Under the pieces are notes generated by a model. That model did not search any database. It was not told the DNA's origin and saw only the letters and a program-made list of their open reading frames with translations. A stretch of 64,000 nucleotides of DNA, from positions 1 to 64,000 of the forward strand of contig CDMY01000346.1 of the NCBI GenBank assembly GCA_001179505.1, read 5' to 3'. Origin of the DNA: Vitrella brassicaformis CCMP3155 (lineage: Eukaryota; Protista; Chromerida). Both the position numbers and the translations under genes were made by a program. Below, in pieces: positions 54,386 through 59,990 of the stretch. The first letter of the stretch is position 1; each line of letters begins with the position of its first letter.

Positions 54386-57085
54386 TCAATGACGGCGTGC
54401 TGCCCGGCCCCTCAGCTCACCCCTTCCCCCACCACGACGGTCGGCCCGCCCCGCCGTCCCCGTCTCCCTCTCCTCGCGTGGTGCCTGTGGCTGCTCCTGC
54501 TCAGTCACCTCCCCCTCTCCTCCCCTGAGCCGCCTCCTGTAGAGGCGCTTCCACACCGGCTCGCGCCTGTCTTGGGCCGCGGTGATCCTCCTTGTGCCGG
54601 CGCAGACCCACGGCCGCACGTGGGCCGCCGGCGTCTCGACTGCCGACTCCTTCTGGGCGGCACGGAGGGCGTACAGCCGCTCGTGCACCGGCTCCTCCCT
54701 CTGGATGCGGCTGGCTCTGCGGGTCAGGTGTGGCCTGAATGTGCAGCCGGCTGGTGGTGGGGCGAGGGAGGGCTTGGGTGGTGGCTGGGAAGCCTCGTCG
54801 GACGGGGGGAGGGTGCTGGCTGTCGTGGGCTGCTGCTGCAGTGGGGCTCTCGTTGCACCCGCGGCCGTCTGCTGCTCCTGCTGGTCGTCCTCCCTCTCCG
54901 CCTGCCGTGCCGCCTTGAGCAGCTGCTGCGCTGTCGGCCTCTCCCCTCTTGGCTTGGTGATGGCGGCGGTGAGGAGGGCCGACCCCGTGTCGACTCTTGG
55001 CCTGGCCCCCTTGACCATCCCCCCCTCCCACCTGCCCCTCCACTCCCTCTCCTCCCTCTTGATCAGCTCAGCGTGGGTGGGGATGGCCGCCTTCTGGGTG
55101 GGCGGGCGAGAGACCTGCGGGGGCCTTCTGCGGTCGGCTTGGCGTCGCCCTGTCTGTTGTCCAGGAGGTCGCGGGGCCCCTGGCGCTGTCTGCTGCTGTC
55201 CTCCTCTTCCACCAGCCCTGATCTCCTCTCGTCGGTCCTGCTGGGGCCTTTTTGCCATCCGTCGGCACGGCTGCTGCTGCCGGTCCGTTGGGCAGGGGGG
55301 GCGGGAGCCGCCCTGCTGGGTGAGGGAGGCCTGGCGACTGAGGGGGCTGGTGGTGAGCGTGGCGGACTCAGAAACACCACCTGATCGACAAAATATACAC
55401 ACACACACACGTGATGGGGTTGTACGTGGGTGGTGCGCGTGGGTTCGTACAGTGCAGCTGTAGGGGCGGCGGGGGGGCCCTGGGCGTCGCCATGGGTGGC
55501 GTTGCGGCGTCGATGACCGACTGCACCAGTGCCCGGGCGCGCTTGAAGCCCGCCGCCAGGTCCTCCAGGGAGGCACGGTCTTCGTGCCGCCACTGAAGTC
55601 CCTTGGCAGCGGTCTCGCCGATGATGCCCATCCACTCGTCCACCCACTCCAGGCCCGGCAGCTCCTTCAGCCGCTCCAGGGGACAGGTCAGTCTGTGGCT
55701 ACCCAGGGGGCGGCCGTCAGGCGTCATGAAAGGGTGCCAGGAGTGCCGCCACTTCATCACCACCAACATGTTACTCCTCGTGATGTCTTTGCTGGTGGGC
55801 TCCTCACTGACCCAGCATCCCATGTTCCTCTGCATGGTCTCCGTGTTGAGGACGCTGAGGGCGAACATCCCCATGCCCCATGAGATGCTCCTCTCGTCCA
55901 TCCACACCGCCTCGTCCTCCCCCTCGCCCACGAGGATTCCGCTGCCGCGCAGCTCACGGCGGCACTCGTCCACGGCGGCCGTCATCTGGTCCAGCTCGGC
56001 TGGCTGCTGGTGGGGTTGATGCCCAGGTTAACCTCGTAGACGGTGCGGGCGGATGGACGGTCCCTCTTGCCCTCGTAGTCCTCCCTGGCGCCCTCAAGGA
56101 AAACCAGCTCCTGCTCGGGGGGGCAGAATGTGGGGGTCCCATCAGGTGCCTGGTCGACGGCCTCGAGGGCGGCCTTCCGGAGGGGCACGCGGGCATGGGC
56201 AGGGCCGATGAATGCGGGCGCGTCGGGGGATGGCTGGACGAGGGTGGCGTTAGCCAGGTCGATGACCCGGATGGCCTCCTTGACGTCCCTCTCCTGCTGC
56301 GATGCCGACACCCGCAAAGCCGACCTCTTGACAAAAACGTTGTTTTTGTGGTGGTCCGTCAAGAGGAGGCCCTCCTTGGCGGCGTGGATGTGGGCCTCGT
56401 TGATGAGCTCGAGGGCGGTCGTGACGGCGAACAAGTCCTCCGCCACTGACCTGACCCTCTGCTCGGCCGTCTTGCCGCTGCAGCGGTCGACCACGGTTTC
56501 CAGGTTGAGATCTCCCGGGTTGCCCTTCCTATCCCTCAGCAGCAGGTTGCGCTGCTCGGTGAACTCCTCTGCATCAAACAGACATGAATCACACACCACA
56601 GACACAGAGAATGACATGCAGTGGGAGCATTGCACTGCGTGCCCCACCCTCTACAGCCTTACATGAGCCTTACATGCATGTGTACCTGAAACACGAGGCA
56701 TCCCGATCGCCACACACGGCAGTCGCATCTGCCTTCCCGCCTGGCAGACCTCGAACGTGGCGCTGTGTGTGGGGTCGGTGTCCTCAAAGAGGAGTGCGAC
56801 GAAGGGCGGGCTGGCGTCGGGCACCTCGCCGCCGAACCTGCGCATCAGCCTTGCCTCCCTCTGCAGCATGCCCGCGCAGTGGCGCAGGTTCGAGGGGCCG
56901 TCCTGGGCGGCCACCTTGAGCACACTGTCGACCTTGAGGAAGCCGCATCTGTCCTTGGGGTCGGGCATCTGCAGCTCTTTGGTAAGGACGGAGACCCCGT
57001 TGGCACAGTGCAGGTGGGCCTCCACAAGGTCCTTCCACTGGTGGACTTGGCCGTTGGTGCGGAAGAGGGTGCCCTTTCGTAACAT
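54386..57085 (-). pseudogene. Divergent protein kinase with a disordered C-tail; frameshifted near 56012
   Basis: VLKVAA, MLQREARLM, LLTDHHKNNVFV, IRVIDLA, GTPTFCPPEQ and SISWGMG. The frame breaks at INP in a C4 run; C5 would give NPHQQPAELDQM. Confidence 0.7.
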
Positions 57086-57372
57086 TGCTGCTGCTGCTCT
57101 TGCTCTTGCTGCTGTCGCTGCTACTACTGCTGCTGCTGCTGCTGACTGCTGCTGCTCTTGCTGCTGCTCTTGCTGCTGCTGCTGCTGCTGCTGCTGTTGA
57201 GGTGCCACTGGCTGGCGGTGGCAAGCAGCGTAGCTCAGCTCAGAATTTGCAAGCTCAAACGGGGAAAGGAAATAAGCTCGCGCACCAGCGCTTCAAATTC
57301 TGCTTTGCCGCCTTTGTTTCAAGTTCGTAACATAGCACCTTTCACCCTTTGAATATCCACGCCAAAACGGAG

Positions 57373-58342
57373 ATGGAGTCGGCGATTCACGCCGCTGCCA
57401 AGGAGTCGGTCATGCTGCACAAGCACGGTACACACACGGACAGTAACAGACAGGAAGAGCCACAGACGGGTGTGACTGACAGGTGATCAAGGGACTCAAT
57501 CAATGTATGTGTGCCGTTTCGTCGCTCTCCGTCGCGCTGTTCAGGTGCGGTGTTGACGCGAGGTCGCAAGAAGGTGGCCGAGGGGTGCAATGAGGAGCGT
57601 GGTCGTTGGCGGAAGCCTCGTTGGATGCACATGATCGGCAGTGAGGGACGGTCGCCCTCCCACGGATGCAGCCTCCACGCAGAGGTAGCCGTCCTCAAGA
57701 CCTTCCTCAACTCTACCTGCCGGGTGAGAAAGGCGGGGAGCAAGCAAGGCAGGCAGGCAAGAAGGACAGGGTCATGAGCTGCATGAGTGGGCAGCGGAGG
57801 AAGGGAAACGTGCCCCAATTACCGTGGCTGACACTGTGTGTGTGTGTGTGGTGCAGGGTCTATCGAAAGGGTGGCGGGTTAAAGGGCGGCGGGGGCAACA
57901 AGCTCAAACGTAAAACCAAAAAGGTGCGCTGGCCGACCCATGCTCGCTCTCGAACACACACATACAAATCTTCTCTCTGATGCAGTTGACCCTTCATGTC
58001 GGTCGCATCACGTCCGCCGCTGCTTCCGCCGATGGCCACCAGCCCGCCTTCCTCAACTCGATGCCGTGCGCCGTCTGCCTGGCCTTCCTGCACAAGATGC
58101 ACATTCCCAAGATAGCCTACTCCACCAACGATGGAGACTTCTCCGTCATGCGCCTGCGGGAACTCCTCCTCACCGATTCGGCCAAGGACATCCGGCCTTC
58201 GAGGGGCTACCGCACTTTGGCGCTGAAGGGTGTGGGTGCCAACGAGGGGAATGTCAGGCTGAGTGCGGCGCACACGCACATACTGCACGCAAGACAGGCG
58301 GGAGATGGTGGCCCGAACATCACAAACAAACAAGGTCAGTGA
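57373..58342 (+). CDS. Zn-dependent cytidine/dCMP-deaminase-like protein of virus/phage type, 4 exons, with a frame discontinuity in exon 3
   Basis: MESAIHAAAKESVMLHKH|GAVLTRGRKKVAEGCN..SLHAEVAVL..LTLHVGRI..NSMPCAVC..IPKIAYST contains the HxE and PCxxC motifs. Confidence 0.85.
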
Positions 58343-59277
58343 GGGACAAATTCAGGCAGGCAGGCAGGTGTGTGATGAGAGCGATTGAATATTTGCAAGC
58401 CGAGCCCTTCGTGGACGCTGACTTGAACAGTATAACCACTTTACCAAGATCTGTGCTGACACCCGCCTGCTGCATGACATACGCTGCGTGATGCCTGACT
58501 GCACGAATGGACCCACCCATACAAGTGCTCTTTCTCTCTGTGTTGCTGTGTGCTGTGTGCAGGCGGCGCGCGTGTTGTCGACCGAGATGGGGGGCGTGGC
58601 CATGTGTCTGATGAGGGCAGCAATTCATCGGGGAGTGAGGGCGGCAGCAGCATGAGGGCGGCGGCCAGCGCCAAGACACGCAAGGGCAAGAAGTAACCAA
58701 GTGACCGAACGGCCGACGTGCATGAATACAGGAATGTTGGAGAGTGATTAATGAGTGCTTATTGTGGATGGATGGATGGTCTGACTGGCCAACGATGCGT
58801 AGATCAGTCGCTGACCGGTGAATGCATGTACGTGTGTATGGAGCGTCCGCTTGTGGACGTTCTCGTTAATGGATTGACACCCACCACCTCTCGTGCATAG
58901 ATACGTACGAAATGTCCAGGAACATACGCCTGAAAATGCACGTATGTCGTGTCTCTTCTCTCCCTCCCTCCCTGATCTGTGTGTCTTGTTTTGTTCCCTC
59001 CTTGGCGCTCTTCGTTTCCACAGACGCTGTAGAACTGCGTTACAGCGGTTAGCGCTCTTCAGCCTGCGTGCGTGCCGATGGAGCTTTATTCCGTGCATGC
59101 GTCTATTTCATGCACCGCTCAACACAATCGCGGCGAAAGTCGACACCATGAGGATTAACCGAGTCATCCATCCTCAACCAACCATCCGGTTGAGGGGCGA
59201 TGCCATGAAAATGACAAGACAAGAAAATATAAATGTAGGCAGCAATGTATGTCTGTCTATCTGTCTTTTCTTGTCCA

Positions 59278-59990
59278 ACAGGGCGACCGCCAGGCGTCAT
59301 GAAATACTGCCAGGAGTGCTGCCACTTCAATACCACCAACATGTTACTCCTCGTGATGTCTTTGCTGGTGGGCTTCTCACTGACGCAGCTTCCCATGTTC
59401 CTCTGCATGGTCTCCGTGTTGAGGACGCTGAGGGCGAACATTGCCATGCCCCATGAGATGCTCCTTTCGTCCATCCACACCGCCTCGTCCTCCCCCTCGC
59501 CCACGAGAATTCCGCTGCCGCGCAGCTCACGGCGGCACTCGTCCACGGCGGCCGTCATCTGGTCCAGCTCGGCTGGCTGCCTGGTGGGGGTTGATCCCCA
59601 GGTTGACATCGTAGACGGTGCGGGCGGATGGGCGGTCCCTCTTGGTCTCGTAGTCCTCCCTGGCGCCCTCAAGGAAAACCAGCTCCTGCTCGGGGGCAGA
59701 ATGTGGGGGTCCCATCAGGTGCCTGGTCGACGGCCTCGAGGGCGGCCTTCCGGAGGGGCACGCGGGCATGGGCAGGGCCGATGAATGGCGGCGCGTCGGG
59801 GGTCGGTTCCTTGCCAAGGACGGAAAACCCGTTGGCACAGTGCAGGTGCGCCTCCACAAGGTTCTCCCACTGGTGAACTTGGCCGTTGGTGCGGAAGAGG
59901 GTGCCCTTTCGTAACATTGCTGCTGCTGCTGTTGCTACGGCTGCTGCTGCTGCTGCTGCTGCTGTGGTGGTGGCTGGAGGTGGCGAGCAG
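59278..59990 (-). pseudogene. Internally deleted, frameshifted paralogue of the 54-57 kb kinase
   Basis: MLRKGTLFRTNGQVHQW..CANGFSVLGKE joins directly to PTPDAPPFIGPAHARV. It has a G7 to G5 deletion and a +1 G, and homology ends near 59280. Confidence 0.85.

What the first reader, a model, noticed from the sequence alone, without database searches (positions are those of the whole stretch)
57857..57923. Deaminase exon 3 enters in frame 0 but must exit in +1: candidate recoding site or poison exon
Seen: exon 3 is 67 nt (cag|GGT..AAG|gtgcgc) and both flanking introns need phase 0. Frame 0 reads GLSKGWRVKGRRGQQAQT and stops at TAA 57911. The +1 frame gives NKLKRKTKK, which joins LTLHVGRI..PCxxC. 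The exon holds a tandem aaagggYggcgg motif. The two Zn-ligand halves are joined only by a +1 ribosomal shift (for example AAA to AAG), exon skipping or a weak alternative splice site. I have an unverified recollection that viral homologues are often annotated as two ORFs split near this point. If so, this would be a conserved expression switch controlling a mutagenic enzyme.
Basis: partly seen in the sequence, partly recalled or inferred. Interest (0 to 1): 0.72.

Follow-up and report, generated by a model that had tools for sequence, protein, structure and literature searches.

The report
Frame-broken deaminase mRNA in Vitrella
A zinc deaminase gene of the alga Vitrella brassicaformis really is spliced into an mRNA whose two catalytic halves are one base out of frame, but the evidence points to an unproductive splice form or a recent one-base lesion, not to a conserved recoding switch.

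Summary
The window is Vitrella brassicaformis scaffold CDMY01000346.1. The 67-nt exon (57857-57923) enters in frame 0 and stops at TAA 57911. Its +1 frame is open and joins exon 4.

One ends ...STCR-GLSKGWRVKGRRGQQAQT-stop. The other starts at MPCAVC. So the junction 57723|57857 and the G5 run are real in RNA, and this is not an assembly error.

The genome annotation (CEM03633.1) keeps the frame only by using a GTCATG donor at 57770. I found no independent support for that donor.

The +1-frame peptide NKLKRKTKK aligns to an invariant K..RK..K motif of the family, so exon 3 is coding. It is not a pure poison exon.

Relatives are 135-197-aa giant-virus deaminases. All 34 IMG/VR loci are unbroken, so the "conserved switch" and "viral homologues are often split" claims are not supported. 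One metagenomic relative (L041) is split +1 in the same linker, at an A6 run.

Best reading: the dominant splice form is unproductive, and minor in-frame sites (AAG acceptors at 57870 and 57885, donor 57770) or exon skipping rescue the protein. The close rival is a recent 1-nt insertion. +1 frameshifting is not excluded but has no evidence.

The parts
57373..57427 (+). Exon 1 (ATG, MESAIHAAAKESVMLHKH + 1 nt)
   Evidence: Matches the N-terminus of P0002 and P0003. Donor is ACG|gtacac.
57545..57723 (+). Exon 2, with the HAE zinc-ligand/catalytic motif. It ends in phase 0 at the donor CGG|gtgaga.
   Evidence: Translation. Transcript ORF P0003 shows the junctions KHG|AVL and STCR|GLSK. Pfam dCMP_cyt_deam_1 covers residues 1-75.
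57724..57856 (+). Intron 2 as removed in the MMETSP transcript (gtgaga...ctgac...(tg)n...gtgcag)
   Evidence: P0003 reads STCR directly followed by GLSK. The ctgac branch-point candidate at 57828-57832 is my inference from the sequence.
57724..57770 (+). 47-nt stretch that the genome annotation treats as coding (VRKAGSKQGRQARRTG) by using a GTCATG donor at 57771. It contains a (CAGG)n microsatellite.
   Evidence: P0002 sequence. The annotation was made with Augustus plus RNA-seq hints (PMC4501334). GGCAGGCAGGCA lies at 57748-57759. The same repeat occurs at 58355-58366, inside intron 4, which the transcript confirms as an intron. AF2 confidence is low here.
57857..57923 (+). Exon 3 (67 nt), the flagged feature. 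Entered in frame 0 after the CAG acceptor. The conserved coding information lies in the +1 frame.
57866..57893 (+). 15-nt tandem duplication (AAAGGGTGGCGGG / AAAGGGCGGCGGG). Each copy holds an AAG|G candidate acceptor, giving exon starts at 57870 and 57885. Both starts are in the productive frame after donor 57723.
   Evidence: The frame arithmetic comes (57870-57858=12, 57885-57858=27).
57891..57895 (+).
   Evidence: Same length in the window, in L001/L002 and, by translation, in MMETSP ORF P0003.
57897..57923 (+). NKLKRKTKK in the +1 frame. A basic helix before strand beta3, homologous to the family's invariant K..RK..K motif.
   Evidence: Alignment A3 has invariant K92, R95, K96 and K99. 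An HMM built without Vitrella gains 9.5-10.5 bits, and 0 of 200 composition-matched shuffles reach that. The AF2 model has a helix at residues 106-114.
57911..57913 (+). Frame-0 stop codon TAA. In the spliced mRNA it lies 359 nt upstream of the last exon-exon junction.
   Evidence: P0003 ends here. The distance is computed from the exon coordinates.
57924..57985 (+). Intron 3 (62 nt, gtgcgc...gatgcag)
   Evidence: P0002 junction KTKK|LTLHV. P0001 starts at MPCAVC rather than at the intronic ATG 57980, so the intron is removed in the transcript. Introns of 63-68 nt fit the annotated neighbouring genes.
57986..58334 (+). Exon 4: strand beta3 (LTLHVGRI), the PCxxC zinc ligands and the rest of the deaminase core
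   Evidence: All four base differences from another strain (L003) are synonymous.
58563..58696 (+). Exon 5, a low-complexity C-terminal tail ending in stop TAA
   Evidence: The P0001/P0002 junction NKQG|GARVV and C-terminus KGKK. The annotated gene range is 57373-58696.

Best explanation
This is a real, intron-containing nuclear gene of Vitrella brassicaformis for a divergent CDA-fold zinc deaminase. Its relatives are mostly giant-virus proteins annotated as deoxycytidylate deaminase.

The strongest splice sites are donor 57723 (G|GTGAGA) and acceptor 57857 (first CAG after the branch-point candidate). They produce the mRNA that is actually seen. In that mRNA exon 3 is entered one base early, and translation stops at TAA 57911 after 96 codons. 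The central beta3 strand and the PCxxC half are left untranslated.

Exon 3 is nevertheless a genuine coding exon, because its 3' part encodes the family's conserved basic helix in the +1 frame.

Full-length enzyme can therefore come only from a minority of transcripts that use in-frame alternative sites. The candidates are the AAG acceptors at 57870 or 57885 inside the 15-nt tandem repeat, the annotated GTCATG donor at 57770, or skipping of exon 3.

The observed transcript is thus an unproductive form that carries a premature stop. It is either splicing noise or regulation at a locus with competing 3' splice sites 13 and 28 nt apart.

Shown: the frame break in DNA and RNA, the homology of the +1 frame, and the intact catalytic motifs.
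Inferred: that a productive minor isoform exists, and which sites it uses.
For: - Transcript ORFs P0003 and P0001 from one MMETSP transcript reproduce the 57723|57857 junction and the stop. MMETSP is an independent sequencing effort (PMC6668581).
- NKLKRKTKK in the +1 frame matches invariant family positions and adds about 10 bits to an HMM score. 0 of 200 shuffles reach that.
- Codon usage over 57857-57893 favours the +1 frame by about 5.5 bits. AAG is 89% of Lys codons in 1096 training codons.
- With acceptor 57870 the distance from HAE to the beta3 arginine is 40 residues. It is 37-39 in 32 viral loci.
- Exon 4 differs from another strain (L003) at 4 bases in 3 codons, all synonymous, including TCC to AGC. 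This argues that the downstream half is or recently was translated.
- HAE and PCxxC are intact and the core folds confidently as a cytidine-deaminase fold.
Against: - No productive transcript or protein was found. The only full-length version in a collection of about 15 billion proteins is the genome annotation model.
- AAG acceptors and a GTCATG donor are weak by general eukaryotic rules. I could not derive a Vitrella-specific splice-site model.
- I have no junction read counts, so "dominant" rests on a single assembled transcript.
- The same data fit a recent one-base insertion equally well.
Confidence: 0.45

Rival explanations
1. Recent one-base insertion, giving a young pseudogene or null allele in this cultured strain. 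Ancestrally exon 3 was 66 nt, spliced at the same strong sites and read in one frame. A single extra base in one of the G runs between 57856 and 57895 broke the frame. The gene is still transcribed and has had no time to decay.
For: - The only assembled mRNA is frame-broken and no productive isoform is on record.
- The exon is a G-rich tandem repeat, which is prone to indels.
- A microsatellite in the same gene differs in length between strains (8-nt CAGG insertion in L003).
- One base fewer anywhere in 57857-57896 gives phase 0/0 with the strong sites.
- The open +1 frame over the whole exon fits an insertion near its 5' end.
Against: - The differences from another strain in exon 4 are all synonymous. 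This only argues against an old lesion.
- Catalytic motifs and 184 downstream codons are intact.
- The other strain's contig (L003) does not cover exon 3, so the insertion cannot be checked.
Confidence: 0.33
2. Exon 3 is a facultative cassette exon. The functional enzyme comes from the exon-skipped mRNA (57723|57986, in frame). Inclusion of the 67-nt exon shuts expression off.
For: - Skipping is in phase.
- It gives an HAE-to-beta3 distance of 22 residues. Classical-length relatives have similar distances: 21 in L038 and L039, and 23 in P0006.
- (TG)n at 57835-57847 and (CA)n at 57954-57966 flank the exon and could pair to loop it out.
Against: - The exon's +1 frame carries the family's conserved basic motif. 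A pure poison exon would not need that.
- No skipped transcript is on record.
- The flanking-repeat fold is not better than shuffles (z = -0.87).
Confidence: 0.08
3. Programmed +1 ribosomal frameshifting in exon 3 of the observed mRNA. For example, tRNA-Lys slips from AAA to AAG at 57866-57869 or 57881-57884, so that one mRNA yields both a 96-aa truncated product and the full enzyme.
For: - The frame-broken mRNA is the one seen.
- The required shift is +1 and must occur before 57897. Two AAA-G sites lie there in frame 0.
- One distant giant-virus relative (L041) is also split by +1 in the same linker, at tggAAAAAAgga, where AAA to AAG slippage would also work.
Against: - 34 of 34 viral loci and all other full-length relatives are unbroken.
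- The codon after AAA, GGG, is not rare (20% of Gly codons). No stop or other known stimulator sits at the shift site.
- I found no report of nuclear frameshifting in chromerids. The three papers that name both terms are, by title and abstract, about mitochondria or plastids, and I did not read them.
- L041 is a single metagenomic contig with no close relatives to compare, and an A6 run is an indel hotspot.
Confidence: 0.06
4. The annotated model (donor 57770 + acceptor 57857, 276 aa) is simply the main mRNA, and the MMETSP contig is a rare or misassembled isoform.
For: - A species-trained gene finder with RNA-seq intron hints chose this model (PMC4501334).
- GTC donors occur in this gene (intron 4, gtcagt, confirmed by P0001).
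Against: - No transcript-derived protein has the VRKAGSKQGRQARRTG segment.
- That segment contains the (CAGG)n repeat, which is intronic in intron 4. It is low-confidence in the AF2 model.
- It makes the HAE-to-beta3 distance 60 residues against 37-39 in the viral relatives.
- Augustus must output an open frame whatever the evidence.
Confidence: 0.06

Closest known systems
Cytidine/deoxycytidylate deaminase superfamily (Pfam PF00383), specifically a 135-197-aa subfamily in giant-virus metagenome-assembled genomes annotated as deoxycytidylate deaminase
   Same: - KHGAVL...G.N, HAE and PCxxC motifs, and a basic K..RK..K helix before beta3.
- The predicted fold matches tetrameric cytidine deaminases and dCMP deaminases (3dmo, 1r5t, 2w4l).
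   Different: - The Vitrella protein scores below the Pfam gathering cut-off (22.7 against 25 bits).
- It has four introns.
- It has a Gly/Lys-rich low-complexity linker in place of the viral F-I-K-I-H...NPD segment.
- It has a longer loop before PCxxC and a roughly 90-residue disordered tail.
- Its substrate is unknown.
Unproductive alternative splicing: competing 3' splice sites or poison exons that put a premature stop upstream of an exon junction (AS-NMD)
   Same: - The mRNA isoform has a stop 359 nt upstream of the last exon-exon junction.
- Competing acceptors lie 13 and 28 nt downstream in the productive frame.
   Different: - The productive isoform has not been observed, and the unproductive one uses the strongest sites.
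- NMD sensitivity, regulation and conservation are untested.
- The exon is coding in the other frame, not a dedicated poison exon.
Programmed +1 ribosomal frameshifting (antizyme, yeast Ty1/ABP140/EST3, Euplotes AAA-UAA sites; from my own knowledge)
   Same: - A +1 offset lies between two halves of one protein on one mRNA.
- AAA-G sites would let tRNA-Lys re-pair in +1.
   Different: - No slow or stop codon follows the slippery codon.
- The break is not conserved in 34 of 34 sampled relatives.
- There is no product evidence.

Membership tests
CDA-superfamily zinc deaminase (PF00383 dCMP_cyt_deam_1) | H(A/C)E motif (zinc ligand plus catalytic Glu) and PCxxC motif (two zinc ligands) | tested here: met
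   HAE is in exon 2 and PCAVC is in exon 4. Both align with the invariant or nearly invariant columns of the family.
CDA-superfamily zinc deaminase (PF00383 dCMP_cyt_deam_1) | Pfam score at or above the gathering cut-off | tested here: not met
   P0002 scores 22.7 bits, E = 9.2e-5, against a cut-off of 25. 14 of the 15 aligned sequences, P0002 included, match PF00383 at E <= 0.01, best 1.3e-10. The large linker splits the domain.
CDA-superfamily zinc deaminase (PF00383 dCMP_cyt_deam_1) | Cytidine-deaminase fold (beta-sheet core with the two zinc-binding helices) | tested here: met
   The AF2 core has pLDDT above 90. Foldseek top hits are cytidine deaminases 3dmo and 1r5t, with probability 1.00 and target TM about 0.7.
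CDA-superfamily zinc deaminase (PF00383 dCMP_cyt_deam_1) | Deaminase activity and substrate | not testable with these tools
   "Deoxycytidylate deaminase" is only the name given to relatives by their sources.
Programmed +1 ribosomal frameshift site | Frame break conserved among relatives at the same place | tested here: not met
   34 of 34 IMG/VR loci have no stop between the motifs, and the other full-length relatives are unbroken. The one exception is L041. No Vitrella orthologue was available.
Programmed +1 ribosomal frameshift site | Slippery P-site codon followed by a slowly decoded or stop codon | tested here: inconclusive
   AAA-G occurs twice in frame 0, but the following GGG makes up 20% of Gly codons in a sample of 1096 codons.
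Programmed +1 ribosomal frameshift site | Trans-frame protein product | not testable with these tools
   No proteomic or ribosome-profiling data are available here.
Unproductive splice isoform (AS-NMD / poison exon) | An isoform carrying a premature stop exists in RNA | tested here: met
   P0003 and P0001 lie on MMETSP Transcript_39305.
Unproductive splice isoform (AS-NMD / poison exon) | A productive isoform from the same gene co-exists | tested here: inconclusive
   In-frame sites exist at 57870, 57885 and 57770, and skipping is in frame. No such product is in the protein collections. Read-level data were not available.
Unproductive splice isoform (AS-NMD / poison exon) | Stop more than about 50 nt upstream of the last exon junction, and NMD sensitivity | tested here: inconclusive
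   The distance is 359 nt by coordinates, so that part is met. NMD rules in chromerids and the sensitivity of this mRNA cannot be tested here.
Unitary pseudogene by 1-nt indel | Frame break present in genomic DNA and confirmed independently | tested here: met
   The window, L001 and L002 are identical, and the transcript translation agrees.
Unitary pseudogene by 1-nt indel | Relaxed constraint downstream of the break | tested here: not met
   The four base differences from L003 in exon 4 are all synonymous. The sample is small (3 codons) and does not exclude a very recent lesion.

The most novel reading that the evidence does not exclude
The linker between the HAE and PCxxC halves of this deaminase family is a recurrent +1 recoding site. 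Ribosomes would slip from AAA to AAG in the Vitrella mRNA (57866 or 57881) and at the A6 run of the giant-virus relative L041, so that a truncated and a full-length product are made from one message.
Probability: 0.06. Interest if true: 0.8.

Novelty: new member of a known kind. Interest (0 to 1): 0.35.

Why it matters
The public protein model for this gene (CEM03633.1 / A0A0G4EXT8) probably contains 16 residues of translated intron. It was patched to hide a frame break that the transcriptome shows is real. Anyone using this model for chromerid deaminase phylogeny or structure should know that.

The locus is a compact, testable case of a gene whose strongest splice sites give an untranslatable message.

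If junction counts show no productive isoform and the protein is still made, it would be the first nuclear +1 recoding candidate in a chromerid. If not, it is an ordinary unproductive isoform or a fresh pseudogene.

Tried and rejected
- Pfam and NCBIfam scans of single exons gave nothing usable.
- A PDB sequence search with exon 2 gave nothing.
- The word search with the full annotated protein found no relatives of 152-483 aa.
- Exact look-ups of P0003 and P0001 in the assembly index found nothing, so no further transcript contigs were available.
- Logan contigs L001 and L002 are unspliced and identical to the genome. They say nothing about splicing.
- Two metagenome scans for other Vitrella-like copies of exon 3 or of the protein found none.
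- No paper mentions run SRR29906534, the source of the other strain's contig.
- I tried to derive Vitrella splice-site preferences by enumerating exon chains that fit the annotated ranges and product lengths of seven neighbouring genes. Solutions ranged from 2 to 10^15 per gene, which is too ambiguous. It only showed that introns of 63-68 nt fit neighbouring models.
- The RNA fold of the exon with its flanks is no better than shuffles.
- Scans for close relatives of the split viral gene L041 found none. Scans with two more distant relatives added one weak partial match.
- Hits P0008 and P0018 are a repetitive and an unrelated sequence by eye. P0005, whose match covers only residues 152-212, was not examined.
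- The idea that the two ORFs work as a split enzyme is rejected. Neither ORF contains strand beta3 (LTLHVGRI), a core strand in the model.
- Assembly error (G4) is rejected.

Full report
**What the window is.** A 135-aa protein identical to exon 4 and exon 5 came back from the word search. Its cluster holds CEM03633.1 of Vitrella brassicaformis CCMP3155, 276 aa, named "CMP/dCMP-type deaminase domain-containing protein". The exact-protein look-up places that gene at 57373-58696 of CDMY01000346.1 (GCA_001179505.1). This is the window's own coordinate system. The window is about 58% G+C. It contains eukaryotic genes such as a Fumble-type pantothenate kinase and a DEAD-box helicase. It is not human.

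**The observation.**
- Exon 2 ends in phase 0 at 57723 (CGG|gtgaga).
- The 67-nt exon 57857-57923 follows a CAG acceptor.
- Frame 0 reads 18 codons and stops at TAA 57911.
- The frame starting at 57858 is open through the whole exon. It continues in phase into exon 4 (57986), which carries strand beta3 and PCxxC.
- The 15-nt tandem repeat is real and non-random.

**RNA evidence.** The cluster also contains two ORFs predicted on one MMETSP transcript, Transcript_39305.
- P0003 (96 aa) is exon 1 + exon 2 + the frame-0 reading of exon 3, down to the residue before the TAA.
- P0001 (135 aa) starts at the Met in front of PCAVC and runs through the exon 4/5 junction to the annotated C-terminus.
- Upstream of that Met, the +1 frame through exon 3 and back into exon 2 has no ATG after its last stop.
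- A retained intron 3 would have offered an in-frame ATG at 57980 (and the Logan gene call P0004).
- So the transcript has the structure exon 1-2-3-4-5, with junctions 57723|57857 and 57923|57986 and the same G-run lengths as the genome.
- MMETSP is an independent sequencing effort (PMC6668581).
- Two Logan run assemblies are identical to the window over 2.1-2.2 kb.
- The G4 assembly-error explanation is therefore rejected.

**The annotation.** CEM03633.1 keeps the frame by extending exon 2 by 47 nt to a GTCATG donor at 57770.
- The annotation was produced with Augustus and RNA-seq intron hints (PMC4501334). Augustus has to output an open frame.
- The extension contains the (CAGG)n microsatellite. 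The same repeat sits inside intron 4, which the transcript confirms as an intron.
- The extension is low-confidence in the structure model.
- No transcript-derived protein contains it.

**What the protein is.**
- Pfam gives dCMP_cyt_deam_1 just below the cut-off.
- An exhaustive phmmer search found 18 hits at E <= 0.001. Most are 112-220-aa proteins with both motifs.
- A profile search added a coherent subfamily of 182-197 aa.
- These relatives lie on giant-virus metagenome-assembled genomes in IMG/VR. One lies on a 126-kb contig next to genes with dNK, S1-P1 nuclease, Evr1/Alr and ATG8 domains.
- A Cyanophora protein is also a member.
- The AF2 model has a confident cytidine-deaminase core. 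Its best PDB matches are cytidine and dCMP deaminases.
- Nothing ties it to AID/APOBEC-type mutators.

**Is exon 3 coding?** Yes, in the +1 frame.
- In the viral subfamily the segment before beta3 has invariant K92, R95, K96 and K99.
- Vitrella's NKLKRKTKK followed by LTLHVGR matches all four, in register with the invariant Arg of beta3.
- I used HMMs built without the Vitrella sequence and slices of the database protein P0002. Adding the exon-3 peptide raises the score by 9.5-10.5 bits over exon 4 alone. None of 200 composition-matched shuffles reaches that.
- AF2 models these residues as a helix.
- Codon usage over the 5' part of the exon also favours the +1 frame by about 5.5 bits. The sample is small.
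- So the frame must change before 57897, and the exon is not a pure poison exon.

**Ways to join the halves.** All are worked out from coordinates only.
- Acceptor 57870 or 57885. Both are AAG|G, one in each repeat unit, and both are in frame after donor 57723.
- Donor 57770 with acceptor 57857.
- Skipping of exon 3.
- A +1 ribosomal shift.
- One base fewer in the DNA.

The distance from HAE to the beta3 arginine would be 40, 35, 60 and 22 residues for the first four routes. For comparison it is 37-39 in 32 viral loci and 21-23 in short-linker relatives. Length therefore favours the AAG acceptors or skipping over the annotated model, but weakly.

**A step I left out.** I did not build or search any joined exon model of my own (57723|57870, 57723|57885 or exon-skipped), because those sequences have no reference. 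Exons were searched singly by reference. Joined sequences were used only where a database protein (P0001-P0004) already existed.

**Conservation of the break.**
- All 34 IMG/VR loci are free of stops from HAE to PCxxC.
- The short members I checked (P0066, on L042 and L043) are contig-end truncations.
- The claim of a conserved switch, and the recollection that viral homologues are often split, are therefore not supported.
- One exception deserves note. On L041, a contig with an intein-containing Rpb1, the N-terminal half (ORF 1577-1873) and the C-terminal half (P0021, 1713-2051) are offset by +1. They overlap around an A6 run in the same linker.
- L041 has no close relatives in IMG/VR. Error, pseudogene and recoding cannot be told apart.
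- Lys-rich linkers are homopolymer-rich, so coincidence is plausible.

**Constraint.** A contig from another sample (L003, SRR29906534) covers exon 4 to the 3' end.
- Exon 4 differs at four bases in three codons. All are synonymous, including TCC to AGC.
- The intron and the 3' flank carry indels.
- By my rough estimate this pattern has a chance of about 1 in 100 without constraint.
- So the downstream half is, or very recently was, translated.
- L003 stops short of exon 3.

**Verdict.** The finding is real and well observed.
- The most likely mechanism is ordinary. The strongest splice sites give an unproductive mRNA, and full-length enzyme depends on minor in-frame sites (confidence 0.45).
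- A recent one-base insertion in the repeat is nearly as likely (0.33).
- Lower down are exon skipping as the productive form (0.08), the annotated model being dominant (0.06) and +1 frameshifting (0.06).
- Junction read counts, which I could not obtain, would decide between most of these.

Noticed in passing
L041:1577-2051 (JGI 3300041081, Ga0452205_061578): A giant-virus-like relative of the deaminase is split into two overlapping ORFs offset by +1. The overlap includes an A6 run (1784-1789) in the same linker between the HAE helix and the basic motif where the Vitrella break lies.
   Followed up: partly
window 57724-57770: The public protein model CEM03633.1 translates 47 nt that the MMETSP transcript removes as intron. 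The stretch holds a (CAGG)n microsatellite that recurs in the confirmed intron 4 (58355-58366) and five more times in the window (7 matches against 0.03 expected).
   Followed up: partly
window 57835-57847 and 57954-57966: (TG)n upstream and (CA)n downstream of exon 3 form a 13-nt, 92% complementary inverted repeat that could loop the exon out. The fold is not better than shuffles (z = -0.87).
   Followed up: partly
L003 (SRR29906534) vs window 57978-58981: A second Vitrella-like lineage exists in a public run. It is 97% identical by BLAST, with only synonymous changes in exon 4, an 8-nt CAGG insertion in intron 4, and a 15-nt deletion plus clustered changes in the 3' flank. Its contig begins just after exon 3.
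   Followed up: partly
L004:1-20579 and loci L006-L039: The deaminase family is widespread in giant-virus MAGs. On a 126-kb contig it sits among genes with ATG8, S1-P1 nuclease, deoxynucleoside kinase, Evr1/Alr and Laminin_G_3 domains. The intron-bearing Vitrella copy and a Cyanophora protein are the only eukaryotic members I identified, which raises the question of virus-host gene transfer. No tree was built.
   Followed up: no
window 57085-57200: A long imperfect GCT/CTG triplet-repeat tract lies between the deaminase gene and its divergently oriented upstream neighbour.
   Followed up: no
window 59281-59361 and 55708-55788: An 81-nt dispersed repeat at 90% identity flanks the deaminase locus on both sides.
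   Followed up: no
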